Assembly (NCBI GenBank): GCA_977030845.1
Contig: OZ365115.1
Location: 31,124,001-31,188,000, forward strand
Source of the DNA: Fimbriosthenelais zetlandica
Lineage: Eukaryota
Direction of reading: 5' to 3'
DNA length: 64,000 bases
Positions 1,265 through 62,489 of this stretch are shown here, piece by piece. The notes under the pieces are model-generated. The model was not told where the DNA came from. It ran no database searches and saw only the letters and a list, made by a program, of their open reading frames with translations. The position numbers and the translations under genes are program-made. The first letter of the stretch is position 1. Each line of letters starts with the position of its first letter.

Positions 1265-1930
1265 TCAAACTGCTTGCATTGATTGGAATTTGGCCAACAA
1301 ATTACGTGTGATTCCTTGTTCTGGAAGGTCTTCGCTTTCATCTTTATCTGTTTCCCGGACCACGTCTTCCCTATAGATTGGTATGTTCTCATACTCTCCA
1401 CCATCTTCATAATGCTCTTCTGGTGATGTGTGCTCAAAATCATCAGTGCCGTCTGGTTGTTCACGTTCCTCTGATGTTTGAGAGATCAGCCTTATAGGTT
1501 GGGCACTGATGGAATTTCTCACCAACTTCTGTTGTTGTAAGACTCTCTCTGGGGTAGGTACTGGAGCTTCGACATCCTCCATAGATTTAAACTGAGAGAG
1601 TAAGCGTCTCGTGGTGTCAGGTGCTGGCAGGTCCTCCTCGGCTGTAGTGTCTGAGCGGATAACGCCTCGTTGAATCTTCCTCCTCCTCTTCTCCTCTCTC
1701 CTGCGCACATTATCAGGATGGTGTGGATGGTTGATTGGATATAAAGGATTCCCATGCTCATCACATTCTAATTCTATATCATCTACATACTCTTCATGGT
1801 CGTCTTCACTGTCGGAGGAAAAGACTTCACCATTTTCCTCATGTCCATTCATCGCCTCCGGGGTAAGTTGCTCCCGGCTAGGAACACCGCCCCATAAAGG
1901 TTTGGCCTCTCTCACTTCCCACTTAAATTG
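1265..1930 (-). CDS. Terminal coding exon with two more repeat copies, ending ...ITRNLLAKFQSMQAV*
   Basis: Acceptor ttctgttttacttctgtcAG, phase 0 matching the 5461 donor. TGA at 1267-1265. Confidence 0.92.
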   Translation of the reverse strand, partial: QFKWEVREAKPLWGGVPSREQLTPEAMNGHEENGEVFSSDSEDDHEEYVDDIELECDEHGNPLYPINHPHHPDNVRRREEKRRRKIQRGVIRSDTTAEEDLPAPDTTRRLLSQFKSMEDVEAPVPTPERVLQQQKLVRNSISAQPIRLISQTSEEREQPDGTDDFEHTSPEEHYEDGGEYENIPIYREDVVRETDKDESEDLPEQGITRNLLAKFQSMQAV

Positions 1931-4900: not shown

Positions 4901-5460
4901 AATTCTCGAACAAAAAGTCCCACCCTGCTGAAGGAAAATTGTTTAATTATATAGAGAGAAAAATATCCAAAAAGCAGCAAAATATGGCTGGTTAGGAATT
5001 GTGGACTTGGAAGATTAATCTTAGAACAAAATAAATGTTCCACAAGAAAGAAAATTTCCTCTTCCTAATTCAACAAGGTGAGAAGTATTCCAATAAATTT
5101 AAAACAGTGAACCAATGTGCCATTGATATACGAAGCTAAAGCTGTACAAATTTACAGTACACATCTGTGTATTAGAATAATTTGGCACAAACATTGGTTA
5201 TTTTACAGTTAAGACAAAATTCGCAGTGATGATTGGGTAGTATCAATATATTTGTCGTTCTTCCAAATAAAGCAAATCTGACCAAAATGCTGCACATGTT
5301 TCCATCAACATACATACACCACATGGTAAACAGCATTCTCTGGTAATGAATCATTATTGTTTTATATATTCGGGGAAAATCTGTCCAATAATTTGATACA
5401 ATATGCAAGTAAAGTCTTCACATTGGGGAGTCAGTCTGTGAAGCCTGGGAGCTAACCTAC

Positions 5461-6313
5461 CTTTTTGTTGGAAGAAGAGCCTTGGTTACTGGCAGTCTCA
5501 TCTTGGAGGGTCTGGAATTTAGCGAGCATGTTTTTAGTGTAAGATGGGGGTGGGAGGAACTCCTCTTCATTGGTATCCGTCTCTCTCACCACATCGCGGT
5601 CACCATCCTGAGAGTTGGAAGGTGAAGCATGTCGGTAGGGTCCAGCACTTCTACCTGGGGTCGTCTGACGAGGGGCAAGTGACTTAGCCGACTCAGCTGG
5701 AGCGGTTTGCTCTATTTGTCTCCACTGTGCTAACAAGGACTTGGTAAAGCCTCTCTCGGGTAATTCTTCAGTTTCGGTCTTGTCGGCTTCACGCAGGACC
5801 TCTGGTCGGTGACCATTTGTGGAGGGCTCGGTGTCTGCTATACCTTCATCAGGGGAAGCACGGATGTTAGTATGCGAAGCAAATTGTTGGTGAGAAAGAA
5901 CTGTACGTTTGGTGGGACTGACGGCTGATGAACGAGCAGGACTTGGCGGAGGGTTGGTGGTATCTTCCATCTCCTTGAACTTGGCTAACATGTTCCTTGT
6001 GAATGAGGGTGGGGGGCGCTCATCTTCCTTCTCAGCGGATTCGTCAGACCTGATGATGTTGGGGTCTCTGTCCAGGCTCTCCCGTGCGTAGGTCACATCC
6101 CGGGCCAGTTCTTCCCTTGGCGGTGTGATCTTACGGACTGGCTTTCTCTCGCTGGGGCTATCCGATTCCATGTCTCTGAACTTAGAGGCCAGGTTACGGG
6201 TGAGGTTTGCTGGTGGCAGCTCCCTCTCCAGTATTTCCTCTTGGCTCTCGGACCGGTTGACCACCTCAGGTGGTGTGTGGTCACCATTCACGTGGCCATT
6301 GGTCGGAGTTGTG
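5461..6313 (-). CDS. Internal exon carrying four copies of the ~32-aa repeat
   Basis: Lies within the 306-aa ORF. Acceptor ttttgattaacAG, donor AAG|GTAGGT, 853 nt, phase 2 to 0. Confidence 0.92.
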
Positions 6314-6741
6314 CTGTTAATCAAAAGTTCATTAATGTTATAGAAAAAACGGTTTTTATTTTTACTCACCAAACCGAAACCTCTCTGAGCCTGATTTTTA
6401 GGATAAATTTGCGCTTATAATTAAGAGATACAGACAACAGGCGTGTGATAGGCAAGTGCAATGATTAAGTGACTGTTACAGTGTATGTTTATATCAAATA
6501 GATCATGCTTAGATTTTTTTGTCAAAAGATGAGGTTATAATGATAAAGGGATTAATATTGCAAACCCAAGGTAAGGGCAAACTTTGGAAAAGCAAAGTAT
6601 ACAGATTTCATAGGCTAATTTACCCGTGTAGAGATTAAAGTGCATGCTCTTACGTAATGATAATAGATTTTTCTGAGGTTCCTACTCTTAATATACTGGG
6701 CGTACTCAACAAATCAGGGGAAATGTTAATGTTCGTATTAC

Positions 6742-6859
6742 CTCTTCGTAAAGGAACGATCGCCAGGCATTGGTGGTCGCTCATCATGGCTTTGGAATCG
6801 AGTTTTGATGTTGCTAATGCTCTGCACTGACTCAATGCCATCCTCAACCTTATCATCAG
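6742..6859 (-). CDS. Internal exon (x-DDKVEDGIESVQSISNIKTRFQSHDERPPMPGDRSFTK-S)
   Basis: Acceptor tttcctgtctttgcAG, donor GAG|GTAATA, 118 nt, phase 1 to 2, in frame with exon 6313-5461. The ORF track shows this region in the wrong frame. Confidence 0.9.
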
Positions 6860-7334
6860 CTGCAAAGACAGGAAATTGAATACATTTAGTCACAAAGTTA
6901 GAAAAAATCAGATACTAGAAACTATATGACAATCCAACTAGATGGCCATATATGGGGAGAGTGTTAAAGTATGCAATGTGGGATGAATTGACTCTGAACT
7001 GTGGCCTAATCCTCTTATGTTCTGTTAATCCTATTACTCTATCGATATACCGCAGACAATCCGGCCTGAACCCCAACAGATACACAGTCCCGAGTCATCC
7101 AAGGTGAAACATAACATACCCATTGTCTCACAAAAGTTAATCTCAATAAAAGACAACAGGGTCGCCACCTTTACTACAAAATAACTACCATGTTATGAGA
7201 ATCATTTTACCTTGAAAAACATAATGTTCATTCCAGATTCACAAACTAGTCAAAATGGATTAACACAAATAGACAGAAAGTACATGTCCTTTAGGTGTTC
7301 AATTGAGTCCTCTTGGACTGGAACTAATCCTTAC

Positions 7335-11261: not shown

Positions 11262-13711
11262 AATGTTATACCAGTGTTTGGCCATGTATGCAGCTGCTGC
11301 AGCGGAACTACATTGAGTGAAATCACATCCCATCAACATCAATTGAGGATCAGATCATCTTGTGGGTATTAGTAATGGTTGAGACAGAGCATGGAATAAT
11401 AAAAATTATAGCAACTTGAAAATAACATCCTGTCTGTATCACAACTTTCTTCAAATATTTGGAACAGATTATTAGTCCTATTACAGGCCTGAAAATAACT
11501 TGGGAAAACCAAATTAGGCTAATACTAGAATAATCCCTATTTAATTAATAATGAAGGGTCAGATCAGTGACCTAAAGCTAAAATAAACAACTAGGCATTG
11601 CCTTCAGAATGACCATTAATCATCATAAAATGTAGATAATGGCACAAGCAATGTGTGTATTTTATTTGAGGCTGGAGACCCTATGTGTTGTCATGGACAC
11701 CCGAGTCATGATGAGTAGCTTTCTAGTTTGACATGTGACTCATACATTACTCATACACAAAGCCATAGGGGGGCGCTGCTCCCCTGGGGAGCACTGGTTG
11801 CACTCTCACTGGAGGACGGGAGAGGATTAATGTGTATACATACATGTGTATAAATATACATTTTATATCTAAGTTATTCGTAATAATGTATGATGTTATT
11901 GCTAGAGTCATCTAACTCCAAATCATGAGAACTAATTCTCACTTCATTAATTCAAAGCATCCAGAAACGACACAGGGAAGTCAGCATGAGAAGAGGATAC
12001 ATACATCTTAGAGTAAAAGCATACATCTATGATCTTAATTTGTAGGTCGTCACCATAGAAACCACCCCCCAAGGGCAGACATATTATATGCACGGTTTGT
12101 CCTAGTTCACACCCATAATATTTTAAGCAAAGCTCCCAGTCCAACTTAAAGAAATAATTTAGAGCAAAGAGCCCATGAAAGCATCTCGTGAAATCCCCCT
12201 GAGAGCTGGAACTATTACTTCCCAGCCGTTTCAATGGATGCCTATAAAGATAAGTGTCATTGGTCCCTGGTCTCTACGAAACTAACCATGCTAGTGATGT
12301 AGAAGGGAGGTGGCCAGGCAGTATTCATATCCCAGAGGTGTGCCATAACCATGAGTTAGAGTAATGAAGCGGCTTCTAACCTGAACCCAACACTCATAAA
12401 GCTAGGTGCGTATGACATTCTCAGTTTGGTAGATTACTATGTAACTACTCACTAGATTTATTCAGACATCTTTTCTAAAAGATATAGGTTAAAAAGATGA
12501 TTAAGATGGGGCTCTCATCTGTATAAATCAGTAGATAGGCCTATTGGAATCGCGGAATGAGCAATCGCGAAGCTAGCAGACCGGAAGTGACATCACAACC
12601 ATTTTCCCAGCACTGTACAAGAGAACTAACTTCCTGTCTGCCAACAACATGTGAGATACTTATTGTGGCCGAGGCCTGGTGGGTCTAGAGCAGTACCAAT
12701 ACACGTGAGACATGAAAAGGATGGATTAAACAGGAGAAAATAATCCCTGCGGCTGCCTGCCTCTAGCAGGCCACTAATTGTGAAATCAATGCTGATAAAC
12801 AGCCACAAGCTTTATACGCCTGTCTGCTCGCATCAAGGTCAAAACCAACATCATGCTTACATTATTCGCACCAAAATAAACATGTAATCACATTGTACAT
12901 AGGCCCATGTACATAATGTCTAATTCTATAGACAATCAACATATGGAAAAGACTTAATCACCTGTCAATGAAATATAAAGGCTAAGACAATCTCCCAATT
13001 TTTCATACAGTCTAAAGTCTGTTCAAAAATGACTTTATCCTCACAAAAGAAACAGGATTATCAAAACTGATGAGCCTTTTAGTATGACTAATTCATTTGT
13101 ATGTATACCATTCCAACTTAATTGGAGGCAAACATGTTATCCTGATAAACCGCTTGTTATGACCTTGCTAGCTACAGGCATGAGCCCCTGATCTATTCCA
13201 CTGTCTGGCTTACAGCAGAATGACATGATCAATGGCCTCCTCTATAGAGAGGAGCTGGAGTTTTCAGGGGTCGGGAAGCATAAAAATACTAATGTTCCTC
13301 TAGACTGATTTGTGGATCGATGGTAGGGAAGATAGCCCAGCAACCAGCCTCAGCCTAGCGCTATATCATAACATCCATCATTGGTCACAGAAATATATGG
13401 CAAGCCAGAAAACCATTAAAAACGGATTCGACGACAGAGATATATTATGGGTAGTCAAATGCTATCAAAAGCCCATGGATATTCTGGAAAGGGGTAAGGC
13501 AAGGACGGAATGACAAAATGATGCTCTAGGTTATCTATAGAGAGGGACAAAGTCACACAGGTGGGGCAACTAACCATACGTCCTCACTGGACTCTTTTAA
13601 GCCGTAATGATATATGCCATTAGCCTCTCTGATTGGTTCATTTCATCAGAGACAATATGCAAATCAAGTCCTATCCACCATAACTACCCTTATCTCCATA
13701 CCACCATGTCG

Positions 13712-13725: not shown

Positions 13726-15549
13726 AGATTATCCATTATGCACTATCAGTACTGGCGCCATTTGTCAGAGGGGAAATGTTGCTCTCACATGACCGTGGTC
13801 AGCCCAGCACATTGCTCATCCTCAATATTTTCCCTGATGTTACATTAAAAAGCAGCTGGCAAAATAATGAACCAGATGCTTCCTTTAAAGCAGCCAAATG
13901 CTTTTAGTAACTTCACGATGTCCTTCACATAACCGAGCAAACTGATGATAAAGATCAGAGCTTTCAACAAAGAAATACAGTATAATTATGACCGCAGAGG
14001 AAAATTCATTTTATTCTAAGATATGACAATGCACAGAGCGACCAATTAAATTTGTACTCTATAGATACTCAGATTGTTCCAAGAAATTTTCTGAGAAATC
14101 AGATCTGCGTGTTCTAATGGTGCTCAGACTCCTTAATAACCTGTACAGTTATTGTATTTTACCCCTGAGTGTTCGCAATGAATATTCCTCTCATTTCATA
14201 AGATAGAATATTACAATATATATATTCCAATGTTCGATGGCCATCAAAGTAAGACATTTCAAGCTCCTTTTAAATATGCAGAACTTCCTTGTGAGGAGAG
14301 CCTAATCTAATGGCTCTCAAGTCAGGCTGAAATTGAAGCCCGGAATAAAGAGTGATGGATGTAGATAGGTGTGAAGAGTAGGGGTAGGGGAGTGGGAGAG
14401 TAGAAGGAGTAGAGATTCTTTGATTTAATCTCCCTCACACTCGATGGATTTCAGTGCAATTCACTTAGAATCTCTCGGCGTCTTATAGGGCCTAGTCATA
14501 ATGTGCACGCTTTAGGAGGAGTGTGTGATGAGGTGGCACGATAATCATTAGTGTTTGGTGGATATGAATATGAAAATCCCAAGAAAACATGCCAAGTGGG
14601 GTTGATAACAATACTAACATGTAGGTCTATGGATTTTAATTCTTGATTGGTAATGAAATATTGGCACAATAGAGCACTTAAAGAACCGGGCATCATGTTT
14701 ACGTTTGGACTGAGAAACCCCAATGTAGGTTAGCCCAGAAAATAATCTGAGGAAAAAGGAGGAAAAAGAGGAAATAATCAGGGAGTGCATCCTCTATCAG
14801 GAAATCAGGCAATCGGTTATACTCTCGGAGCTGTACTTGAAGCTACTAGAAGCTAGACGAAGGCCCAGTAGGGCAAGTTCCATTTTGAACACAAGCTGTC
14901 ATAGAGTATATGGTAAACCATGCTAAAAACCTGATTTGTCCAGTATATTTAGCAGAAACCGACATAAATAGTTAATAGGAGGACAGGGGAACCTCTATAC
15001 ATTGTATCTAACCATCATTGCCTCAGTTAATGTTTTTGGGAGTGACAGCCAATAGATATGATACGTCATTACATTCACATGTATGGACTTTTTACTTCAA
15101 CATCCTAAAGCAATCAATTTCATTGCAATTGCGTCAAACTAGTGTACACAATTTATTTTGTTGCAAGTGTTTTTGATGATTATAATTAGAAAACTTTAAG
15201 CAAGGGAAAGAGGTTTGCTTAAGGGATGTACGTGTTTAAGGGGACAGAGACTTTTTGTAGCCATGGAATGTGGTAGTGTTTATGAAGGTTTTTTTTTACA
15301 CAGTGAGTCATTATGCCTTAAATGAGGTTAGGTGTTATAGTGCACAGCTCCCTATTGAAAGTTAAGACCGAATATTGAAATTGAAAAATGTGAAGAGTAC
15401 TATACAGGCTAAACATGGCCATGACAACTATTTAGGATATGTCATTAATTTGTCGTTAAATTAATATAACGTAAAATAGAAAGAAAATGATAACAAGACA
15501 ACGAAACAGGCGCTAAGTATGTAGACAGGCTATGTATGTAGATATAACA

Positions 15550-18600: not shown

Positions 18601-21600
18601 TCGAAATGGATTGTTGGAAGAACCTGAAAAGTATCATTAAAAATGCAAGGGGAAACAGAGGTATCAGGGTTATATGGTTTAAAGGAATTGTGAATAATTC
18701 AGAAGAGCTTGTCAGGAATCATGAATTATGGCACTGTGGGGTCATGATACCTGTCAGGATACATAAACAATTTATTCAACTATGCTTCCATTAAGAAAAC
18801 TAAAGTATGCTCATATATGTACAGTTCATTTCAAGAAATACACCCTGTGCCGTTGGCCATTGAAAATGGTCGAAAAGCATATTTCTGGTGTTCAAATGGA
18901 AATGGAAGTTCAAATCAAAAGGCAAGAAGGGACATGAAAAAATGGAAAATTGAAATATCTTACCCATATACTCATCAGTATAGGCATACTCCAGGGTGCT
19001 CACCCCATGACTTATATTAGGAGTGATGGTCGGAGTAGCTTTTATGTGATGATGCAAACGTTTATACCAATCTGGTGTTTTGGGAGAAGTAGCAGCCATG
19101 TTTTCAACTTTTCTTAAAAACACTTTAAATTTACAGGAATGATGGATGTTCTCTTAATAGTTTTGGACAAGAAATATTCCTTTGGTCCTTTGTTCCTTTG
19201 GTCCCAAATTGCTTCTTGTAGTTTGACAATGGATAGTAATTCAGGATATGAATCTTTGTCTCATTTCCACAATTCAAGATGCAGTTCCTTGAATAGCTTA
19301 GTTTAACAGGATACTCAACTCAATGGTATTTCCAGGGTGCATAGAAATATATACGACACAATAAATGTCACAATTGTCAACAGGTCCTGACCACGGAAAG
19401 TGTGCAATACCAGGGTCTTTATGATATTAATATGCTTTATAATGGCATAATATACATGCGGGCTAATCCAAATGAACTATAACATATAAGCACTGGACGG
19501 ATGGACCAAATGGCCAGTTAAGGTCATGGAGCAAGTCACAACACTATGCAGACCAACAGTGACCAACTCCCTCCACTGCTTTTGGAATCTGGACAAATAA
19601 AACCTTGCAGCTTTAATTGAGTTTGCCAAATCCAACCACTCAAGTTCAATGTACAATTTATCCAATAGACTCCATGAGCAATACTTGAAATGGAACTTGA
19701 GTAGGACTAACGATGAACATTCAGTCCACTTGTAATGGATTCCGGGACTGAGAGCAATAAAAAAAAACTCAAATAAAATGTCCGGTGTGGGTGAAATATG
19801 ATGATTATTAATACTCAGTGGTTAAAGCTGGATGATTGGAAGGCAGGGGAGAAAGAGATGGAAAAAATGGGGTCATAATACGCCACTCTTCCCTTAGGCC
19901 AACCTTCAATGGTTATGTCCACTTTCCCTACGGCAATTGTCCCGATCGCAATTGATTATTGTGGGATCCAGTGAAAACAAATGTTTTGACTATCACAGAG
20001 TTTCAGGGAGGGAATGACAGAGGCTGGGCTTTTTGCACTCACTTCACCCAGCTATTTCAACGATCTCACAATCCTCCTCTTCTCTTCAATTCCAAATCTG
20101 AAACTGCCAACGCAGAGAGACTGGGAACAGTACTGGTCTATGGGAGAGATATACTGAATAGGTTGTGGTTCCCAACTGAACACATTCACCATCCCCACAT
20201 GCAGACTCTGGGTAAGTCTGTGTCAACCATTCCCTGCCACTTTGACTGGTATGTGTGTGTTCTTTCTGGCTACACCACACCCACAAAAATGTCCCCTTCA
20301 AGTGATCAAGTTGGAATCGTTTGGAATTCCTTCGGTAGAAAGTGGGTTTATTATACCACTTGTAGTTCCAAAGGTACGTACGGAGGTTGCTAAGTCCTAG
20401 TTTTATGACCTATTCCGGATGAATGATCTTGAGATTTGATCATCATCAGTAATGCATTCTTATAATGCACCCTTCCTCCTAGTCTTGACACTTGATGGTT
20501 GTTTTATGTGGTGGTATACAAAAGCATCCCACTGTGGTAGGATGGATACCAGTACTGCAGGTAGTGAGGAACCATTAACTGGTGTATATATATACCTTTC
20601 CAACTTATACCAATATTTGCTGTTTGCCAGCCAAGTGGTCAGGTGAATACAGAGTAGCAGGTGCTTGCCTACCAATTTGGAATCCAGGTGAGATGGGTCA
20701 ACTCCTGGGTGGATGTGTATGCTCATATAGGGGACTGGTATACATATGTACTGCTCATCCTGGCCCTGAATCATGTGTCAGTCAGTGAGTATATGTGTGT
20801 AATCATGCGTGACCCAAGCTCTTCCCCAGTCCTCCCTCCAATGTGTAACTGGGATCCAATGGTGCCTGGCAGATATAATGTAAATGGTATAGACTACATA
20901 CCATGCAGCACTTCCATGCCTACCGGATCCAAAAGGTGTGCCTACCAGCCTCTCCTCACCTGTCTCCCCATCCGATACCACTGCTCCACTAGCCACCTGT
21001 GATCACATGTACACCTATAATGTACAGGTCTATGGGGCTGATGTTAAGTGTTTCAGTTACGGATCAATGCATTCCGGTGTACACATACTCATCCACTATT
21101 CAATAGACCATCACCTCCCCTACTTCTATATATATATATGCCACATAGATCTATACACATTAAGAAATAGATATGTGTATAGGATGTATTAATGTACCTA
21201 CCATATAACTCTGGGGTGTTTAATGGTTCCACATGAGTGACCGCCTCTAGATATACCATCTAAACATAGCATACACCTTTACTGTCGAGTTTAGGTCAAT
21301 CATCACCCTATAAATTCAAGTGAGATCTCCTATTTTGGGTTCCCAATTTAGGAACCAACAGATATTTGAAATATTACATGTATTTATCCTAATTATATCA
21401 AAATTTATTTTTCAATTATCTGTTCAACGTTGGAGATGATCTATTTAATCTGTCATGCGAATCCAACCACATATATTTTCACATAGACCATAATCATTAA
21501 CCCATTTGACTTTTATCAGATCGTAAGTTGATTGCCTTAGATTTCCAAAACAAGTTCTCAGGTATGGTCAACCCCTTGAGGGCACTAAGTATAGAGTCCA

Positions 21601-27844: not shown

Positions 27845-27904
27845 CGTGAACTACGTCGTCAGATAGCGGCGCTGTTTCTTCTGTGGTGGCCACCGTTTGT
27901 GACA
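27845..27904 (-). CDS. 60-nt symmetric internal exon (x-SQTVATTEETAPLSDDVVH)
   Basis: Acceptor gatcctctttttAG, donor CACG|GTGAGT, phase 1 to 1, open frame, GC-richer than its flanks. Confidence 0.8.
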
Positions 27905-28602: not shown

Positions 28603-31530
28603 CTGGGGGTGGGAGGTAGACAGCAACACAGTGAGTCAGCACTTGACCACCTCTTCCCTCAATTGCCCACACTATTTTCTGTCTCTCCTTCCCTTATCTG
28701 TCCCTATCTTTTCCCTGTCATCTGTGCATCTTCCGCTTGGCCTTCTTGTTCACCCACTCCTTCCCTTACAAGGCAATGAATTGAAATGAACTGCATCTCG
28801 AAAGAATGCCAATACCTATACAACAGGAGAATTCTAAGCCTGCACATTCCATATGTTCACCCCTGGAGTTACAAAGGCGCAATAATGGGAAGGGCTGAGG
28901 CAATGCATGTCAATGTATCTTAACAAAATATTTTCCTATATAACATTTCAAGGGCAGGAGGATGTCAGTATCCTGGAGTGCAAGTCACAACATATAGCAC
29001 TACTGGGTCATGTTTACACCTAAAAAGGTATGGAGAATGAAAATGTTATACGAGAGGCCATCGACTTAAGGCCAAACCACTAATCTGTAGATTAAATTCG
29101 GGAAGTGAGAGTTATATACATGTATAATGGTTCTGTAGAGGCAAATGCCTCGTACACAGGGAAATTGGATCCTGATTTTCAGGGGGAGCAGAGGGCCTTT
29201 TCAATCACTGGGTTCAAGCCCTCACAATGTATCAATGGAAAGGTCTCTCTGAATTAGTCATGGATTAGTCTAGCGACAATGACCAATGACTCAGGGTCTA
29301 AAAATAGCACCAGCTCAGACTCCAAGAGCTTTTCTTTAGCTCCTGCTCCCCAATTGGAGTAGGTGTTAGCAATTTAAACAGACCGAGGAAGAAAGTTGAT
29401 GCAGCTTTCTTCCAGAGATTCTATGATGATTTGAAGACATCCCTACAGCTGCACAGTGGATCTTGACCTTTAGAGAGTAGCTCGGAAGCGGCACCTTTGA
29501 TCTCTCCTCATAAAACGCGGTGATAAGAGAGAGGGATGTGGAGCTAGGGTGGGCCATATCTCCTCAGGCTCAAGGTAAAGGGGTGTGAAGGCTCGCCACT
29601 TTTTCCTGAGCTACACATCTGAGGCCTCGCTACTCCATTCACACGTTCAGGCCAAGGAAACTGATACTTCTTTTAATGCCCATGCATGTCTCCGACACCG
29701 GCTATGGTATAGGACTTGGGTAAAAGGGCAACACGCAGGAACAGAGAAAGATTTGTAAATACTTCTTCCCAGATTAAGCTGTACAAATCGCTTTTTCGTA
29801 TTGCATTAATTGCTGCAGTCGGGACTGAAGTAAACCAGTGGTCTGGAAAACTTCCCAAAGACAGAGATGTCCATCAAACGAGTCGATTTATTTACAGAAG
29901 AACCGATTCATTTATTGACTACATGCGGGAGAAGACTCCAATCGCACGAGTGCAATTCTTGCTATGCTCCACAGATCTAAAAGTCTTCACTTCGACTCTG
30001 AAAGATCTAAAGGCCTTAAGACTCCGAAGAACGATCCGCATGCAGTGATTCCACTAGAAAATAGCACAAATTTCTTTCATGGGATTTCTGCCAACCTATG
30101 TATCCGAGGTCAATATTAGAAACAAGCTACTACATTTGGCCTAGTATTGTCCCATGGAATTACCAAATGCCCTCAGCAGGTACATGGTGACACCACACAA
30201 AGCTTTGATGACGTGTTTTAGATGTTCTTTACCCAAGTTGGCAAATCACAGAACTTCAAAGCTACACAATCGCTGTGACCTATCCCAGTACATTATCCTT
30301 AGAGTACCACCTGATAAATAGGAACAGGGACCCATTTCATAATAATAAAATTGTCCCACAACAGTCAATGGTAAGCCTATGGGCTAATGCAATACATTTT
30401 TGTTATGAAACAGCCCCCAGGACAAGGACCCAGGGGGCCCATTGAGGATATAGACAACGACTAAAGTGTAGGGGGTCACATATTTCAAACTGCATCTAAA
30501 AGGAGGGATTGTCATGGCATCGAGACATGGAATGTTCCATGAGAGAGAACTGTGAATGTATAATACAAACATTATTCAATGGGAATGTAAATAAACTGGC
30601 ATAATTGACATTATGTGGACATAAGCATATATTTTGTGTGCTATTGGGAAACAATTAGGCTTAATTATGACTTTTATAAATGAGTCATTCACCTAAAATA
30701 CCCAAGTAATGAGGGCATGTTTATCAAAAAACAGAACCTAAACAAAGATCGTGAATGGAATAAAACAACTTTAAACAATGAATGTGCTTTCTGGAAATGT
30801 CCCCTCATAAACCAAAACAATTAAACATCCATATTATCCCCCATCCCATGCACCTTTTCACAATAAACTGGTAACATTTTTAACAACTATCCAAGGTCCT
30901 GCAACTTTTTATGCTTCACTTCAATGCTTTTCTATGCATTAGCACATCGTTTTCCAGCCTTATCAGAAGTAATATAACCACCTATGAGTTCTAGATTGGG
31001 AGTTTTAAGCGGATAATAAACACGCAGAACTCTTATTGTAGGCACATTAGGGCTGGCTAGAGACACATCTCTGGAATGGTCTGGATGGTACTAAACACCA
31101 ATATCCTGTTATAGCGAGCAGGATGCGCGCACAAGCCTGTACCTCCATTGATGGTTTGCCAAGCGAAAACAATTAACAAAATAACCAACACCCAAAAACA
31201 GCATTGAAGTGTATTAATAATGACTCTAATCAAGATATAACTTTCAGTGAAAAAAGGTACCTAACAAAAGTGGATTGTAAATCAGTCCAACAGAGTGGGA
31301 CATAATAAACAAAAGATATATACATTTGGATTACCATAATCCATATATATATCTAATGTTATTTCATATGGGTCTGTATAATATCTTCAGGAATCCATTT
31401 TATGTCATTATGCAGCTCAATAAATCAAGGTAGTCTACATAATATGAGATTTGGTTGTACTGCAAATAATCTGAAAATAAATGGTAAATTAATATGATCA
31501 AAGAGAGACCAATATGATATGAATCCTCAC

Positions 31531-34099
31531 TTGTTTCCTCTGGTACATGCTGCCCTTCCTCCTCTTCCACATTAGGGCTGGGATGCTCAATAAAGGTATC
31601 CACCTCTTCATCACTCTCCTTCTCTTCCTGCTCCTCTTCCTCTACCACAGCCTCCTGCTGTTTCTCCTCCACTTGCTCCTCTTCTTTGGTAGGCTCCGCG
31701 AAATCCACAAGTGTTTGCTCCTGCGAACTCTGGTCTGCTAAGGGTGTGGGTTCGATTCCGTCCATGGTAGAACCCTGGGGCTCAGCTGGTTCTTCCTGCT
31801 GTTCTTCTTCCTCCTGGGACACATCAATAAGCCCTGGAGATGATTCATTTTGCACTGGCTGGACCTCTTCTGCTTTAACCCTTTCATCACCATCCTCTTT
31901 CTCATCCACTTCCTCTGTGGCATTCTCCTCTAGAGCACCCAGATTCACTAGGTCATTAGTTTCTTGCATAGAAAGGTTAGTGACAGCTTCTTTCTCCTCC
32001 TCTGGTTCCGCTGGGGGTTCGACCTTGTTATGTAATCCGTCATCTTGCTCCTCCATCTCTTGGCTTTCTTCCTCTGGTTGTCCACTTATCACTTGTTGGT
32101 CTTCTTCGTCCTCTTCTGGTTTCTCAGCCATCTCAATCAAATATGGGCCAGGACCAGTACAAGGCTCTTTGGGCAATTGCCCTTGTTCTTCCTCCACCAT
32201 CTCCTCTTCTCCTTCATTCAATCCCTTCTCATCAGACACATCCTTATCAGCAGCATCTATGTCCTTTTCAAGGCTAATCAGTTCAGCAGTATTGTTTTCA
32301 AGTGTTGAAGAAGAATCTATGGCAATGGAAGGAGGCAGAGCTGCATCCACCTCACCACTGGCTGCCCCGGCGTCATCTACATTCTGCTGGTGAGCTATCA
32401 TATCTCCATCACTTGGACCCACACCACCATGATCAGCTGTATCTATGTCTTTCTCCTCTTCAGCCTCCTCAGTCTTACCTGTCGTGGCAGACATATCCAT
32501 GCTGGAGGTATCCGCAGAGAAGGCCTCACTCGCATTCGTGCAGCAATTGTCGGTCTCTTGCGGAGCAGCGGCTGATGCAGTTTCGCCGGTCTCCGACGAA
32601 TCTTGTCCGTGGCATGCCGTATCCACTACTTCCACATCACTTAACTTCTCCGCGTCCCTCTTTTCTTCCTCACTGTTCGATCTCTCCATCCTTGTACTGA
32701 GATAATCCACAAAGTTATCAGATAATCCCTGGTTCAATCCAGTGCTGTTATCCGCGGGGTTATTGGGACTGGCAGGGCTGGGTGAAGGGGACCTTCTACC
32801 TACGAGCTCTAAGGTCTCTGTACTACTGGAGGACCTCTTGGCAATGAATGAATCCTCCTGCAGCTCTTCCTCCACCTGCTCCTCTTCCTTCTGCTCTTCC
32901 TCAGTGACTGATGAGTGTAGTGGGGGAGAGAGTGGGTTGTGGCAGTGAGTTGTGGTGATGTCTGGACCTGGGGAAGGACTGTGAGGGGAGGATATATGGG
33001 AAGTGTTGCTAGTAAAACCCGGTGCAGTGTCACACTCCACTAACACACTCTCCTGCTCTGCTGTGGTGGTGGTCGTGGCCACAGTTAAGGATGTGAGCTG
33101 GTGGTGAGGGAGGGAAAAGCTGCTGCTATACAAGCCCTCCTTCTCCACTACCTCCTCCTGCTGCTGAGGCTGCTGCAACTGCTTCCCCTGGTCCTCCATC
33201 TGCCCCTCCTCCTCCTCCTCCCCCTCCTCCCCATCTAGTACCACACATGCATTGCTGCTCTGGCCCTCTTTCTCCACAATTGCAATACTAGAGCAATGCC
33301 CTACAAACTCATTCTCTCGAGCACCACCATTGCAGTCAATGGAAGTGGTGGTGCCAGCCAAAGTGGTGCTGGTGGTGGGAGTCTGGTCAGGGCTTGTTTT
33401 CCAACCAGACTGCTGGCCATCCTCGGCTGAATTGATGTCCTCAGTGCGTCCATTCAGACCAATGCTATTCAATTCAGATTGAGTATCCCCAGACTCTCTA
33501 CATCCCAGATCCTCATCCCTTACCGTGACAGGCACGCCTTCCCCTCTCACACCACCATCCCTGTCCATTTCCTCAGTATCTATTCCATTCTCCCCATCCC
33601 TATCTTTTGAGTTATGTGATATATGTTTCTCTGTCCCTGTATCCTTGTCCTCATCGGGGTCGATGTCATCACTACAAAGTGAATCGCGGATATTTTCACA
33701 ATTTCTCAAATCCTCCTCCCCCTCAGAAACCTCCATGTCCTCCTCCTCTTCATCCCCTGTTTGAAATTTCCTCCCGTTTTTTCTTTCATTCTCGATGTTT
33801 TCTTCACCGGTCACTCTTTCTTCACAAACTCTTGAAGCGGAGGAGCCAGGATCACCTTGGCTCATGTGATTGTTCCTACAACTATTGTCCTCATCCAGTG
33901 AATCCCTCTCAGGATCAGAAAGCACCTCCTCTTCTCCTACCCCTTCTTCCCCGTTGGCATCTCTGAGCATGATAAATCCATTGTATTTGTTATCCAGATC
34001 ATTGTGAGCTCCGTTTCTTCTCAGATCCACCCACTCTTCCTCCTCTCCCCCTGAGGAGCTATAACGTCCATTGTTGGCACAGTAACCATTTGAAGCCAT
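31531..34099 (-). CDS. Giant exon encoding ~856 aa of acidic (E/D-rich) low-complexity, probably disordered sequence; alternative first exon, or internal cassette if the AG acceptor giving an exon start at 34113 is used
   Basis: 899-aa ORF in the track with ATG in ATAATGG context. Coding-like composition ends at the phase-1 donor CAA|GTGAGG (31531/31530). A weaker phase-1 acceptor tgtAG would give a symmetric 2583-nt exon. Confidence 0.85.
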
Positions 34100-35411
34100 T
34101 ATTCCATGTGTATCTACAATGCACCTTAATATATAGGTCCTTTAGGTAGAAATAGCCTTTGTGAAGCGCTGATGACTTTGTCGGCTTGTCGCAATGATTC
34201 ACACAGGTGTAAACTAGTGCAGTGAGTTGGGAGTCTGGTCGTGGGACAGTCAGGGGTGGAATGACTCGCCACGCTAGATGACGATTGGGTTTTGTCTGGC
34301 AGGGAGCAAACACTAATCAACCAACCAGGTCCCATGCTTTAATTCACCCCCTTTAGCCCCCACCCCTTCACACCCACCCCCCATTACCCCCACTCTTTCC
34401 TCAATGAACGCACCACCCCACCCACTGGGTCTCCACTCCCCTCCCACCTGTCCACCACACACCTAATACTCACAATGGGATTTCATTCTAAAATCCATGC
34501 AAGCTCCGAGCCAAACCATTTGGCAGTTAAATATCTAAACGTGTCAGTTTAACCTGAGGCAAGCCCCCCTGCCACATGTTCATATAGGTAGAGTATAATA
34601 TAAATCCCAGTCAAATTAAATCAGATTTAATGAGATTGAAGCATGCATTCGTTCCACCGACCTACTAATCCACCTAGCCACCCAGTCATGGCCTTCTATA
34701 ATCTAACCGACATCACAGCCAGACTGAAGAAAAACCCGGGATAATGAAGAATCCCACCAGGTCACATATTTGCTAAGCCACATCACCGCCCCTCCCAACC
34801 CTCCACGCCTTCCATTATTCAATTGACTGGATAGAACTTGAGATTAACAAGGACAAAAGTGCAATGAGATCATAGCACCGACCCCCCCTCCCCCGTCAAC
34901 CCAACCCCTTATAATCTATTATTTGTAATGAAAGGGTCACAATGTAAGCCTATGATTATACCCCAACCCCCGTCTGAGCCAGATACATCTTAGGGCATGG
35001 GGGTAGGCAAAGGGGCTGGGGATAAGAAAACCTAAGAAGATTCTGCGAAGGTTTACTTTAGATACACCCCAACCCACGCCATTGGGAAAGAACCCAAATT
35101 AAAATTGAACTCATGACCTTAATGATTTAATAATAATTAGTGCTTAAAGCTTAAGCATCACAAATCCCTAAATACCAGACCCCCCTCCCCCCCCCCCTTC
35201 AACCCACAACTTCTACATCTGCTAGTTTTCAGGCCAGACATTAACGCTGCACCCTACCACAAAGTATTCAGCGCTGACTCATTGCTCAAACCCGTCACTT
35301 GTATGAGCTCATCAGCCTCTGCCTTCAGCCTCAGCTTGTTATTGTCATCATTTCAAGGCCACGTGCACGCTGAAAGGTGCCGGCATATAGCCTCCAGCAC
35401 TGAGGCTGCAT

Positions 35412-57500: not shown

Positions 57501-58383
57501 TCTTCAGGAAGCTTTGGCATTTGTCTCAGCCTATACATGTATAACCCCCATCAGGCTTTGGTTTCTCATCAAGTCATTGTTTCCAGGCCAATGACTCATT
57601 AAAATTAATCAATACATGTAAAGGGAGACCTGGGAGAGATGCTATATTCCAGGCTATATTTGTGAGACATAATGGATTGGCAATTCAGGCTATTTCTGTA
57701 AGAGCACTGCATACTCTCCTGTAATGCATGGTAAGAGCAATTAGCAGTAATAGAACGGGGGCAGGGAGGGCTTTCTAGACGTAGTAAAGCTAATGAGAAG
57801 CGACATCTGTACGGTTAATTGAGGTAATGTAGGAATGTCCAGCCACATTCCACCCACGTACACTAGATCTATAGGCCTTATAGGATAAATCCATTCACTA
57901 ATTTAGGTCCTTTGGTACAATGCCAGGCAGGAATGGCACCAAGAGGCAATTGTTCTATAGGAATTCAATCCTCATGTATACAGACGAAGTATTGGAATGT
58001 ATTGAATCATGGATATCCACGAAAATGCATCGAATTACCCAATGCTCATAACATAATTGAAAATTCATACATTGATGCATTGCACTTAATTCTGTTCAAT
58101 AGGCAACTGTCTTAGTAAATTAGACCAGCCCATTCAGGGTTCTAGCTAAACCTCAAAATGTAGGAGCCATTTAGAAATGTGGCCAATTGGGGCTCTCTAT
58201 GAGCAAAATGGAAAAGAAAGAAGCCAGGGGGCGGGGGTAATTTTATAATACATGTATAACAATCACATCACGTTAGGTGTTTGGAACTGCGTATGTCCTA
58301 GCTTTTGACCCCCTGTGAAGCTTTCTACCAACTGGTGTGCTTGTGAAATACAATGCATGTTCACCTGAATGGTTGGCCTGTTG

Positions 58384-58634
58384 CTTCCAACTAAACTACC
58401 CCCCCCCCCCCCCCAACCCAGCAATCACCCCACCCCCTCGCCAATACACACACCGTCCTGTGCCTCGAACCACTCACCACGATCAGTAACACCCCAAACT
58501 ACTTGCAATTAAACTACCCCCACCTCCAATGGACATAACCGATCCTCTGCTGCATGTGTGAAAGCTATTGGGCCGACCTGTGCCTCGAAGCCACACCAGA
58601 TAATCCCACCCCAAACTACTTCCAACTAAACTGG
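58384..58634 (+). repeat. Degenerate ~117-118-bp tandem repeat, about 2.1 copies, including a poly-C tract
   Basis: CTTSCAAYTAAACT recurs at 58384, 58502 and 58619; CTGTGCCTCGAA...CACCCCAAACTA occurs twice. Confidence 0.8.
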
Positions 58635-59047
58635 TGGCTCTTGTCAGAGAATTTCTCTGTTTATGACAATTATGGAGTGGCCTCTCAATAAGTAGCCAAT
58701 CGTGTAGTCAACTGCAAGTCCATAGTGACCAAATAATTACAGAATAACCAACTAAAGATTAGTGGTTCTATTAGGGCGTTGATGTTTACAATTTGGAGAA
58801 CCATTTCTTTCAGAACACTAAGATCTTCAAGACGAATGGACGATCATCGCTATAAGGTCACGGGAATCTTTAGCAAAAGGAAGGCTAACCAGAAGTGTTC
58901 AATGATGCTGCCACCTAACGTCTTCCATGGCAACAAGTCAGTTTGAGTTGAATTATAAACAGCAACTAAGGTATAAGGATTTTAGCAAATTCATATGAGA
59001 ATGTCTAGGAAATTTTGGTTGCTATTATGTTTAAATTATTGACTCAC

Positions 59048-59114
59048 CATGCATTTTCTTTTTCTGCAATAACTTCTGGGTCAATCGAGGGAAACAGGAC
59101 ATCAATATCCCCAT
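59048..59114 (-). CDS. Alternative first coding exon, MGILMSCFPRLTQKLLQKKKMH, for a LIM-less and probably lipid-anchored isoform
   Basis: ATG in ATAATGG context with an in-frame stop upstream. 22 codons plus 1 nt, then strong donor ATG|GTGAGT. Phase 1 matches all downstream acceptors. The sequence has G2/S6/C7 plus a basic cluster. Confidence 0.7.
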
Positions 59115-60750
59115 TATGATAACTTCATTATCCCAAATCCGGAATTCAAAATACTTGATCCATTGGAATCACCATGGATGCCTCAGGCCCAAATCGTAAG
59201 CATAAAATGATCCAAAACTTGGAAACAATAACAGAAGTGTTTTACTGGGAAGGTATATCCAGAAAGTGCGACTTAGACAATCACTTCTTCCATGTGAGAA
59301 AAATGGGTTTTAAAAGCACACAGGTAAGAAGATAGCATGTGCCTTCTTTCCTACCATCCAGTAAGAGCTACAGGTGTAGGTAATGTGTCCAGGTGGACCT
59401 GATACATCAATCAACGTGTGGAAAAAACATCTGTAGCAGAGTACGTAATTGTTATATTATATTTCCTTAATACGTAGCAGTTCAACTGTTGCTTGGTCCA
59501 ATATGGAATACTGCATCAATAGCAGGGTATGCCTCCGCGACTCCCTGAAAACTAATGGGTATGGGAAAGCCAGGATTGGAACCAAATTGATTCTGATGAT
59601 ATATGAGAGGCTGTAGTGTCCACTGATCCCATCACCAATGGGATAATATTCTATAAAATCTCTCAAACCCCTTTCACAATATGAATTGCTTTTTTAACCA
59701 CACAAATCAGCTATTGTGCTTACACTTAAATGATTGAAAACAAAAAGATAAAACCATTATTTTTCATTTGTTGCATAATACTATCATGAGATTTTGCCAA
59801 TTATTACAGGTGAATGGGGTTTTATATGCAGTTATTTAACACCAGTTCACAACAAGAGAATGAATACTGGCTCCTGTCATGAGACCTGTCCCGGACCCCT
59901 CACTGACCATGGCACAGGATGAGGAACCAATGTGTTCATTGAAAATCATTCATGCTCATCCAAGTTAAACTGTGAGCAGTAGCATGTGCCTGTGTGAACA
60001 ATAGCTATAAAATGACTAGCCATTATAATTGGTGTTGTATACTAGTTCACAACTTCCAGCAGAATCCATGTTTACTAGAAATGATAGTCAATAATGTGTT
60101 GAATTGTTGGAACAGTTCACAACGCAAATCCTTGGAATGCCAAGTATCAGCTTCAAGTGGAAATCTTCAGATTAATCACAGTAGATTTCTCATCCTCTAT
60201 CCTCAGCACAACTGACACAAGTGCATTCAGAATGTAAACAATTGAAAGTGGATCTTCCACAATTGAAATTCCTTTCCGAATCAATGTATCATGGCCTAGT
60301 GTAAGGCCATGCCATCCACAATGACTGGTACTGTTCAAAGTGACAAGTATCCAGACATAATAAGGTCCTCATCCTAGACTAGGCCCATCTACTTACACCA
60401 ACCATCATCTTACCTTATTACCTATTACTGATTGAGAATGACTGATGTGAAAATCTGTTCCCAAGAAGGAAAAAATGAAAAAACCTAACAAGTCTAATGA
60501 CTGGGACAGGCTTGGTTCTTGAAAACTACACCAGGCTGTTAGAGAAACAAAAGCCTGGAGAAAAATAACATGGAATAAGTCAAAACTAAATACATAGCAC
60601 GCAGCAAGGAGAACTGAAATCCAGAACATAATTGTAGTGGAACCTTCTCATGGAGCAGTTTTTCCGGGCGATAAGTTGGAATGAAAAGATCTGGGTCTGA
60701 CACATGTATCACTTAAATGTGTAAAAATCCCAAAAGGTGGAGCCACGTAC

Positions 60751-60825
60751 CTGCTCTCTCTACTGGTACTTCCTTCTGCCACTGACGGCTGTGCTTCTCC
60801 TTGCCGAATCCCTCATCATAGTTTC
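60751..60825 (-). CDS. LIMA1-like: Post-LIM exon (G-NYDEGFGKEKHSRQWQKEVPVERA)
   Basis: Acceptor gacttcccatAG, donor CAG|GTACGT, 75 nt, phase 1 to 1. Produces KGNYDEGFG...H...W, the conserved extension after the LIM domain in LIMA1/LIMD2/XIRP2. Confidence 0.95.
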
Positions 60826-61100: not shown

Positions 61101-61174
61101 CTTTGGTCTTGAATATCTCGATGAAGTGAGGCTTGCAGTAGACTTTGCCTTCCATGGAGGCGAAGTTACCAAGA
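61101..61174 (-). CDS. LIMA1-like: LIM-domain exon B ([26 protein letters not shown])
   Basis: Acceptor catcattgcAG, donor AAG|GTGAGT, 74 nt, phase 2 to 1, in frame with exon A. Completes the LIM domain (x17-C-x2-H); YCKPH is typical of EPLIN/LIMD2-type LIM domains. Confidence 0.95.
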
Positions 61175-62364: not shown

Positions 62365-62489
62365 CTCAGGATCCGCTTGCAATGGGTACACTTGAAACAC
62401 ATCTTGTGATAGATGTTTTTGTCGGCGATCATTTTTTCCATCTCGTAGACACGCTTGTCACAGAGGGCACAACGGTTATCCCCAGCTCC
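62365..62489 (-). CDS. LIMA1-like: LIM-domain exon A (GAGDNRCALCDKRVYEMEKMIADKNIYHKMCFKCTHCKRIL-S) of a LIMA1/EPLIN/LIMD2/XIRP-family gene; the upstream exon lies outside the window
   Basis: Hand translation. Acceptor gttgttttcAG, donor GAG|GTACCA, 125 nt, phase 0 to 2. Contains C-x2-C-x17-H-x2-C-x2-C-x2-C, the first part of a LIM double zinc finger. Not in the ORF track. Confidence 0.95.

What the first reader, a model, noticed from the sequence alone, without database searches (positions are those of the whole stretch)
59048..59114. Hidden alternative first exon replaces the LIM domain with a myristoyl/palmitoyl/polybasic membrane anchor
MGILMSCFPRLTQKLLQKKKMH has Gly2, Ser6, Cys7 and a basic patch. 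Established: M-G-x-x-x-S is the N-myristoyltransferase consensus, and a nearby Cys or polybasic stretch is the second signal for plasma-membrane or raft targeting (Src-family and G-alpha type). It lies 1.6 kb downstream of the last LIM exon. It cannot be an in-frame internal exon because of an upstream in-frame stop, and it has a strong phase-1 donor. It is too short for the ORF track. Inference: a lipid-anchored, LIM-less isoform tethering the repeat array to membranes, which I do not know for this family.
Basis: partly seen in the sequence, partly recalled or inferred. Interest (0 to 1): 0.78.

Follow-up and report, generated by a model that had tools for sequence, protein, structure and literature searches.

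The report
Conserved lipid-anchor alternative start exon
A 67-base unannotated exon inside an annelid EPLIN-like LIM gene starts a shorter, LIM-less protein with a Met-Gly-x-x-x-Ser-Cys plus basic-patch signal, and the same exon sits at the same place in two distant annelids, so it is very probably a real membrane-anchoring alternative start and not a chance reading frame.

Summary
On the minus strand, 59114-59048 reads MGILMSCFPRLTQKLLQKKKMH plus one G, followed by GTGAGT. It lies 1,637 bases after the third LIM exon. Its phase-1 donor matches the phase-1 acceptors at 34113, 27904 and 6859.

No RNA run was listed, so use of the exon could not be seen directly.

The decisive evidence is comparative. 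In Capitella teleta, an unannotated ORF MGSLCSCFPFKRRPRI +G|GT sits in the collinear intron of gene model ELU14546.1. A third annelid contig (L009) has MGNICSCFRKKRRPSP +G|GT. Introns are otherwise unalignable. Between Capitella and L009, conservation starts one base before the ATG and ends eight bases past the donor. Gly2, Cys5, Ser6 and Arg13 are kept there through synonymous codon changes. In both capitellid-type species the coding piece is 49 bases, so it cannot be an in-frame cassette. Only initiation at this ATG reads the conserved peptide.

The conserved residues (Gly2, Ser6, Cys7, basic cluster) are those that N-myristoylation plus palmitoylation need.

Not shown: a promoter of its own, the acceptor used, and the lipids themselves.

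Alternative first exons that add a myristoylation signal are a known kind (ABL1 1b). This is a new member, in an uncharacterised family. The scan lists this stretch once more (s1-181655), without a follow-up.

The parts
59048..59114 (-). Coding part of the alternative 5' exon: ATG plus 22 codons plus the first base (G) of a split codon. The N-terminus MGILMSCFP is followed by a basic patch.
   Evidence: Orthologous exons in Capitella (L005:13305-13353) and L009:242-290.
59042..59047 (-). Splice donor GTGAGT, phase 1.
   Evidence: Same phase and same split-codon G as the Capitella and L009 donors.
59115..59175 (-). Unconserved upstream stretch (5' UTR or promoter-proximal). It holds three short upstream ATGs, an in-frame TGA 18 codons up, and a weak AG at 59124-59123.
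   Evidence: No DNA similarity to other species upstream of the ATG.
62365..62489 (-). LIM exon 1 (phase-2 donor).
61101..61174 (-). LIM exon 2 (phase-1 donor).
60751..60825 (-). LIM exon 3 (GNYDEGFG... tail), with phase-1 donor CAG|GTACGT. This is the exon that the alternative start bypasses.
31400..34113 (-). Large acidic exon, probably optional, with a phase-1 acceptor at 34113. Its 3' end lies somewhere before the ORF stop at 31400 and was not determined.
27845..27904 (-). 60-base phase 1-1 exon (VSQTVATTEETAPLSDDVVH). It is the counterpart of the capitellid '...EATEIIR' exon and a likely acceptor for the new exon.
   Evidence: compared.
6742..6859 (-). Conserved exon ADDKVEDGIESVQSISNIKTRFQ..., with a phase-1 acceptor. 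It is the first exon shared by all homologues after the LIM.
5461..6313 (-). Main repeat exon, an array of LPxxxxT[KR]xLLAKF motifs.
1265..1930 (-). Last coding exon (QFKWEVREAKPLW... with two more repeats, then the stop).

Best explanation
The stretch 59114-59048 (minus strand) is a genuine, evolutionarily conserved alternative 5' coding exon of an annelid EPLIN-type LIM/repeat gene. Transcripts that contain it begin translation at its ATG and splice from the phase-1 donor at 59048 to one of the phase-1 acceptors downstream. The most likely acceptors are 27904 and/or 6859, and 34113 is optional. The product lacks everything upstream, including the LIM domain, but keeps the C-terminal LPxxxT[KR]xLLAKF repeat array.

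Inferred mechanism: Met1 is removed and Gly2 is N-myristoylated co-translationally (Ser6 is the preferred residue at that position). Cys7 (Cys5 and Cys7 in capitellids) is then S-palmitoylated at membranes, and the Lys/Arg cluster adds electrostatic binding. The repeat array is thereby tethered to the cytoplasmic face of membranes instead of being targeted through the LIM and N-terminal part.

Shown here: the sequence features, the phase compatibility and the cross-species conservation. Inferred: transcription and the start site, the choice of acceptor, lipidation and localisation.
For: (1) Capitella teleta locus L005. In an intron of gene model ELU14546.1, at 13305, an unannotated ORF MGSLCSCFPFKRRPRI plus G is followed by GTATTT. 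It shares 7 of the first 9 residues with the window. It was the best ATG-peptide match out of 809 in the locus, with BLOSUM score 38 against a maximum of 29 in 150 shuffles.
(2) L009, a third annelid. MGNICSCFRKKRRPSP plus G is followed by GTATTT at position 242. That is upstream of the same two exons as in Capitella (GAPIQMS..., then AEDKIEDDRENLPSIGNIKSRFE).
(3) Footprint. Between Capitella and L009 only two islands align in the interval, a known exon and this exon. The second runs from -1 of the ATG to donor +8 at 70.7% identity. The window's intron shows no DNA similarity to either species.
(4) Coding signature. Between Capitella and L009, Gly2, Cys5, Ser6 and Arg13 are kept with different codons. 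The window adds further synonymous variants at Gly2, Leu4, Ser6, Phe8 and Pro9 (read).
(5) Phase. All three orthologues end with G|GT in phase 1, as do the flanking introns.
(6) In Capitella and L009 the coding piece is 49 bases. The only nearby AG sites give exon lengths that are not multiples of three, and an in-frame stop lies 5 codons upstream in Capitella. The conserved peptide is therefore read only by initiation at this ATG.
(7) The motif ATG-GGN...YTN...WSN-TGY-TTY-CCN occurs once in the 447-Mb genome, at this exon, and never in the reversed control.
(8) The conserved residues fit the N-myristoylation minimum GxxxS/T with Gly2 essential (PMC2133112) and PROSITE PS00008.
(9) LIM-to-repeat splicing is real in relatives: the transcript-derived P0126 and P0160 carry LIM plus the LPSI.N motif. 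The new exon is therefore an alternative to the LIM-containing form.
Against: There is no transcript evidence of any kind. No sequencing run was listed for this genome, and no protein beginning with this peptide is in the protein collections searched. Three short upstream ATGs lie within 60 bases of the start, so the transcription start would have to be close or the uORFs tolerated. No promoter signal could be assessed. In one further annelid (L008) the best candidate (MGSVWCSFPTDCLSKS plus G|GTGCAA, also 49 bases) is not statistically distinguishable from chance (9 of 150 shuffles), and its donor is weak. In another (L010) nothing was found in the 7.1 kb available upstream of the conserved exon. 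Ile3 and Leu4 are bulkier than in typical NMT substrates. The second Capitella paralogue, which carries the LIM, has no such exon.
Confidence: 0.7

Rival explanations
1. It is the normal first coding exon of a separate downstream transcription unit, not an alternative start of one gene. On this reading the upstream unit ends with or just after the LIM, and the repeat protein is mainly made from this ATG.
For: Many molluscan homologues end about 30 residues after a C-terminal LIM. Reading through the LIM exon 3 donor reaches a stop after 14 codons. Capitella has the units in tandem, and its annotation splits them into separate genes.
Against: Transcript-derived proteins of relatives (P0126, P0160, P0151) and the Owenia model P0034 join the LIM directly to the downstream exons. 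LIM exon 3 has a strong phase-1 donor that matches the downstream acceptors. This reading still makes the exon a real lipid-anchor start and changes only the word 'alternative'.
Confidence: 0.12
2. It is a real conserved start exon, but the N-terminus is not lipidated. The conserved Cys/Ser/Phe/Pro and basic residues would serve another purpose, for example a binding or degradation motif, metal binding or nuclear targeting.
For: Lipidation was not tested. Ile3 and Leu4 are not optimal for NMT. The L008 candidate swaps Ser6 and Cys7.
Against: Invariant Met-Gly at the very start, Ser6, adjacent Cys and a basic cluster together form the classical signature (PMC2133112). Gly2 is kept through three different codons.
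Confidence: 0.1
3. It is an internal in-frame cassette exon (59122-59048, 75 bases) spliced between LIM exon 3 and the next exon. It would insert 25 residues and add no lipid anchor.
For: An AG at 59124-59123 gives a phase-1 acceptor and a length divisible by three. The frame is open from there.
Against: There is no pyrimidine tract in front of that AG. In Capitella and L009 no acceptor gives an in-frame cassette, since the coding length is 49 bases and Capitella has a stop 5 codons upstream. Conservation begins exactly at the ATG.
Confidence: 0.04
4. It is a chance open reading frame next to a chance strong donor in a 54-kb intron, with no function.
For: MG-ORFs with a GTRAGT donor and the PROSITE pattern occur 0.25 times per window by chance. 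No RNA evidence exists.
Against: The collinear orthologous exon in two distant annelids has the same phase, the same split-codon base and synonymous codon changes, inside introns that are otherwise unalignable. The motif is unique in the genome.
Confidence: 0.04

Closest known systems
SH4-type dual-acylation signals of Src-family kinases (Fyn, Lck) and G-alpha subunits
   Same: Met-Gly start, Ser at position 6, a Cys close to Gly2 and basic residues within the first 10-20 residues. Myristate plus palmitate and/or a basic patch gives stable binding to the inner leaflet (PMC2133112; PMC2136224, listed).
   Different: Here the Cys is at position 7 (5 and 7 in capitellids) rather than 3, 5 or 6. 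The cargo is a disordered repeat protein, not a kinase or a G protein. No sequence homology is claimed and lipidation is untested.
ABL1 isoforms 1a/1b (alternative first exons, only 1b myristoylated)
   Same: Alternative 5' exons decide whether the protein starts with a myristoylation signal. PMC8115115 gives the alternative first exons. That only 1b is myristoylated is from my own knowledge. From my own knowledge, CYB5R3, PKA C-alpha and AKAP12 are similar cases.
   Different: In ABL1 the myristate is an intramolecular autoinhibitory latch and both isoforms keep all domains. Here the alternative start removes a whole targeting domain (LIM plus the N-terminal half) and is predicted to anchor to membranes.
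Vertebrate EPLIN/LIMA1 alpha and beta isoforms
   Same: The LIM domain of this gene family is EPLIN-type: the best solved-structure match for relative P0160 is 2D8Y EPLIN, E 5.6e-25, including the GNY[DE]EGFG tail. EPLIN also makes a shorter isoform from an internal alternative promoter and has actin-binding regions on both sides of a central LIM (PMC2172667).
   Different: Both EPLIN isoforms keep the LIM and neither is reported as lipidated; a search for EPLIN with myristoylation gave no natural case. The annelid repeat array has no Pfam family, and homology to EPLIN outside the LIM was not shown.
Capitella teleta CAPTEDRAFT_199500 (ELU14546.1) and Owenia fusiformis CAH1787453.1
   Same: These are the nearest named homologues of the window's gene, with the same exon order after the LIM position. 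The Capitella locus carries the orthologous start exon.
   Different: The Capitella model lacks LIM exons and does not annotate the MG exon. The Owenia locus could not be fetched.

Membership tests
N-myristoyltransferase substrates | Gly directly after the initiator Met of the translated product. | tested here: met
   ATG GGG at 59114-59109. Met-Gly is invariant in the Capitella and L009 orthologues, with three different Gly codons. That this ATG is the initiator is inferred from conservation starting at the ATG.
N-myristoyltransferase substrates | Ser/Thr (or a small residue) at position 6, no Pro at 7, and an uncharged, non-aromatic residue at 3 (GxxxS/T; PROSITE PS00008). | tested here: met
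   G-I-L-M-S-C fits. Ser6 is conserved in the three robust orthologues. The rule is from PMC2133112.
N-myristoyltransferase substrates | Myristate is actually attached. | not testable with these tools
   Needs metabolic labelling, mass spectrometry or an in-vitro NMT assay.
Dual-acylation (SH4-like) membrane anchors | A palmitoylatable Cys within a few residues of Gly2 and/or a polybasic second signal. | tested here: met
   Cys7 in the window and Cys5 plus Cys7 in Capitella and L009. Basic residues: R10, K14 and K18-20 in the window, KRRPR in Capitella and RKKRR in L009.
Alternative first exon (own promoter) | Transcription start immediately upstream, with no splicing into the exon. | not testable with these tools
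   No RNA, CAGE or read data were available. Capitella has an AG directly in front of the ATG, so a non-coding upstream exon cannot be excluded.
Alternative first exon (own promoter) | The donor is used and joined in frame to downstream exons of the same gene. | tested here: inconclusive
   The donor sequence and phase are compatible with acceptors 34113, 27904 and 6859 and are conserved across species. No junction reads exist.
EPLIN/LIMA1-type LIM proteins | A single LIM domain of EPLIN type followed by the GNYDEGFG tail. | tested here: met
   Pfam LIM hits on the window exons. A close relative's LIM has its best match to EPLIN 2D8Y, E 5.6e-25. The window reads GNYDEGFGKEKHSRQW.
EPLIN/LIMA1-type LIM proteins | Actin-binding regions flanking the LIM; orthology outside the LIM. 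| not tested
   The repeats have no Pfam family. No comparison with vertebrate EPLIN outside the LIM was run.

The most novel reading that the evidence does not exclude
An ancient start-site switch, shared by distant annelids, toggles one cytoskeletal scaffold between two targeting modes. With the upstream half and the EPLIN-type LIM it goes to actin or junctions. With a 16-22-residue myristoyl/palmitoyl/polybasic anchor it goes to the membrane. The same LPxxxT[KR]xLLAKF repeat array would thus be deployed at two different cellular sites. That would make the uncharacterised repeat array a membrane-cortex linker and give a first functional handle on this lophotrochozoan protein family.
Probability: 0.45. 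Interest if true: 0.6.

Novelty: new member of a known kind. Interest (0 to 1): 0.52.

Why it matters
This case shows that a 67-base exon, too short for ORF tracks and missing from the GenBank model of the model annelid Capitella teleta, can be recognised from sequence and confirmed by phylogenetic footprinting. It predicts a lipid-anchored, LIM-less isoform of an EPLIN-like scaffold, which has not been described for the EPLIN/LIMA1 family in the literature searched. The conserved residues (G2, S6, C7, basic patch) give precise point mutants for testing. Because Capitella carries the orthologous exon, the prediction can be tested in an established laboratory species. The finding also improves gene models for this uncharacterised lophotrochozoan family.

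Tried and rejected
RNA evidence:
- Two run searches, one on the 6-kb region and one on the 2.2-kb acidic exon, listed no run. Read laying therefore could not be used.
- Protein-collection searches for transcripts starting with the peptide found none. This covers the representatives search with the repeat exon, P0003 and the Capitella segment P0002:160-420.
- P0003 is a 5'-truncated transcript and says nothing about the start.
- A search with the LIM exon 1 ORF, meant to anchor genomic contigs of relatives, found no candidates. The 39-residue version was below the tool's minimum.

Orthologue hunting:
- Owenia P0034 is not on record.
- P0008 and P0005 came back without DNA.
- L007/L008: no LIM exons within 17 kb upstream, and only a non-significant candidate at L008:6425.
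- Walking further failed because the called genes there do not translate.
- L010 has no candidate in 7.1 kb.
- L011 and L012 have too little upstream sequence.
- L002, a closer relative at about 75% DNA identity, covers only the repeat exon.

Rejected ideas:
- Transposon or repeat origin: the stretch is single copy.
- A paralogous copy elsewhere in the genome: the strict motif is unique, and looser MGxxC[ST]CF hits are unrelated.
- A read-through micropeptide: similarity between Capitella and L009 stops eight bases after the donor.
- A signal peptide: the hydrophobic run is only about 7 residues and is absent in the capitellid orthologues.

Full report
**1. The observation**

On the minus strand the window reads ATG GGG ATA TTG ATG TCC TGT TTC CCT ... 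ATG CAT G|GTGAGT.
- The ATG is at 59114-59112 and the last exon base (G) is at 59048. The donor is at 59047-59042.
- The peptide is MGILMSCFPRLTQKLLQKKKMH.
- The start context has A at -3 and G at +4.
- An in-frame TGA lies 18 codons upstream, and three short upstream ATGs lie within 60 bases.
- The stretch is single copy in the 447-Mb assembly.

**2. The gene around it**

The gene runs on the minus strand.
- The LIM domain is split over three exons: 62489-62365, 61174-61101 and 60825-60751.
- The third LIM exon ends ...VERA plus G, with donor CAG|GTACGT in phase 1.
- Homologues from the representatives search and tblastn place the next universally conserved exon at 6859-6742. It reads ADDKVEDGIESVQSISNIKTRFQ... 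and has a phase-1 acceptor.
- After it come the main repeat exon at 6313-5461 and a last exon at 1930-1265.
- Between the LIM and 6859 lie a 60-base phase 1-1 exon at 27904-27845 and a 2.7-kb acidic exon with a phase-1 acceptor at 34113.

Earlier notes of the scan say the gene continues upstream of the window. On that account the LIM is central, as in EPLIN. I did not check this.

A close relative's LIM is EPLIN-type: its best solved-structure match is 2D8Y, E 5.6e-25, including the GNY[DE]EGFG tail. The repeats have no Pfam family. The named homologues are uncharacterised proteins of Capitella, Owenia and molluscs.

**3. Chance**

In 300 third-order Markov simulations of the window, counted on both strands:
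- an MG-ORF with a GTRAGT donor appeared 1.24 times per window;
- 0.25 of these also fitted the PROSITE myristoylation pattern;
- 0.007 additionally had a nearby Cys and at least four Lys/Arg.

The real window has exactly one such ORF. The criteria were chosen after seeing the sequence and the scan reads thousands of windows, so this alone is not convincing.

**4. RNA evidence**

None could be had. Both run searches listed nothing, so no reads could be laid. No protein in the collections starts with this peptide.

**5. Comparative evidence, which decides the case**

*Capitella teleta.* I fetched the locus of the best long homologue, ELU14546.1 (L005), and mapped its exons.
- The intron between the model's exons at 12555-12605 and 13871-13936 lies just upstream of the orthologous ADDLVKDDREDLPSIGNIKSHF exon.
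- In it, an unannotated ORF starts at 13305: MGSLCSCFPFKRRPRI, then G|GTATTT.
- Seven of the first nine residues equal the window's (MG.L.SCFP).
- A basic cluster follows, and the donor is phase 1 with the same split-codon G.
- Among all 809 ATG-started 9-mers of the 27.5-kb locus (both strands), it is the best match to the window peptide by far. Its BLOSUM score is 38, the runner-up scores 19, and the maximum in 150 shuffles is 29.

*A third annelid.* Contig L009 has MGNICSCFRKKRRPSP, then G|GTATTT, at position 242. That is upstream of the same two exons in the same order as in Capitella.

*Footprint.* Between Capitella and L009 only two islands align in the whole interval. One is a known exon. 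The other is this exon: 58 bases ungapped at 70.7% identity, from one base before the ATG to eight bases past the donor. The window's intron has no detectable DNA similarity to either species. These lineages are therefore far beyond neutral alignability.

*Coding signature.* The kept residues use different codons (read):

| Residue | Codons seen |
|---|---|
| Gly2 | GGG / GGT / GGA |
| Ser6 | TCC / TCG / TCT |
| Cys5 | TGC / TGT |
| Phe8 | TTC / TTT |
| Pro9 | CCT / CCC |
| Arg13 | CGT / CGA |

This is the signature of selection on the protein.

*Uniqueness.* The back-translated motif occurs once in the window's whole genome, at this exon, and never in the reversed control.

**6. Start exon or cassette?**

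In this species an AG at 59124-59123 could make a 75-base in-frame cassette.

The orthologues settle the point.
- In Capitella and L009 the coding piece is 49 bases.
- Capitella has an in-frame stop five codons upstream, and its only nearby AG abuts the ATG.
- The flanking introns are phase 1.
- Any inclusion as an internal exon would therefore shift the frame and would not read the conserved peptide.
- Conservation begins at the ATG.

The only reading that explains the conservation in all three species is translation initiating here. Whether transcription also starts just upstream, or a non-coding exon is spliced in front, cannot be told. The AG in front of the Capitella ATG leaves the second option open.

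**7. Weaker and negative comparisons**

- Another annelid (L007/L008) has MGSVWCSFPTDCLSKS plus G|GTGCAA at L008:6425. This is also 49 bases and phase 1, and it lies 11 kb upstream of its ADD exon.
- That match is not significant (9 of 150 shuffles), its donor is weak, and a second MG...FP ORF lies 400 bases away. I count it as inconclusive.
- L010 has no candidate in the 7.1 kb available.
- L011 and L012 have too little upstream sequence.
- The second, LIM-bearing Capitella paralogue has no such exon in its 250-base intron.

**8. Mechanism**

The invariant or near-invariant features are Met-Gly at the start, Ser6, Cys7 (plus Cys5 in capitellids), Phe8 and a Lys/Arg cluster. The minimum N-myristoylation consensus is GxxxS/T, with Gly2 essential and Ser/Thr at position 6 preferred. 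Myristate plus palmitate on a neighbouring Cys is the Src-family and G-alpha way of stable membrane binding (PMC2133112).

I infer the following.
- Gly2 is myristoylated co-translationally.
- The Cys is palmitoylated.
- The basic patch helps binding.
- The LIM-less repeat array is thereby tethered to the cytoplasmic face of membranes.

Transcript-derived relatives that join the LIM to the downstream exons (P0126, P0160) show that the LIM-containing form also exists. The exon is therefore an alternative start. Lipidation and localisation are untested.

**9. Comparison with what is known**

- Alternative first exons that add or remove a myristoylation signal are well known. ABL1 1a/1b is an example (PMC8115115, for the alternative first exons). 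CYB5R3, PKA C-alpha and AKAP12 are further examples from my own knowledge.
- EPLIN itself has alpha and beta isoforms from alternative promoters, but both keep the LIM (PMC2172667).
- A search for EPLIN with myristoylation found no natural lipidated isoform.

This is a new member of a known kind of switch, in an uncharacterised lophotrochozoan family, with an exon missing from the Capitella GenBank model.

**10. Verdict**

- Observation: confirmed.
- Interpretation: supported by conservation, but with no RNA or biochemical proof.
- My probabilities: about 0.9 that this is a conserved coding start exon, and about 0.7 for the full reading (a LIM-less, lipid-anchored isoform).
- Interest is moderate. 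The prediction is solid and testable, and it improves annotation, but the mechanism class is familiar.

Noticed in passing
L005 (Capitella teleta KB294418.1) 1-23000: Three homologous units lie in tandem: the end of a 3,035-residue gene, gene model ELU14546.1 (no LIM exons), and then LIM exons at 19061-19577. The LIM exons are annotated as a separate 89-residue LIM protein, yet they are followed by an LPSIRNLK-type exon (19835-19915) and repeat exons up to 22959. The public gene models there look fragmented.
   Followed up: partly
window 59122-59048 (-): An AG at 59124-59123 would allow a 75-base in-frame cassette (VII plus the MG peptide) between the phase-1 introns. The acceptor is weak and the feature is not conserved in other species.
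   Followed up: partly
window 27845-27904 (-): A small phase 1-1 exon (VSQTVATTEETAPLSDDVVH, donor GTGAGT) supplies the 'DDVVH' half of the first repeat unit. It corresponds to the capitellid '...EATEIIR' exon.
   Followed up: partly
window 60708-60750 (-): If the LIM exon 3 donor is not used, the frame ends after 14 more codons. That would give a protein ending just after the LIM, the architecture of many molluscan homologues with a C-terminal LIM.
   Followed up: no
L008:6425 and L008:6827: Two MG...FP-starting ORFs lie 400 bases apart in another annelid's intron (MGSVWCSFP and MGITSQWFP). The first has the same 49-base, phase-1 layout as the capitellid exons but a weak donor. This may be a diverged orthologue with a local duplicate, or chance.
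   Followed up: partly
own genome, loci L013-L024: The looser motif MGxxC[ST]CF occurs 12 times in the genome against 5 in the reversed control. None lies near this gene and none has the basic cluster plus donor. Some may be N-termini of other acylated proteins.
   Followed up: partly
L002 (Logan ERR14368249 contig) against window 4223-6870: A related species aligns at about 75-80% DNA identity across the repeat exon and its flanking non-coding sequence. A closer relative therefore exists in public data and could be used for fine-scale conservation of the new exon.
   Followed up: no
window 58260-58620: A G-rich / C-rich low-complexity tract (runs of GGGGG / CCCCC, read as poly-Gly / poly-Pro ORFs on the two strands) lies about 500 bases downstream of the new exon, within the intron.
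   Followed up: no
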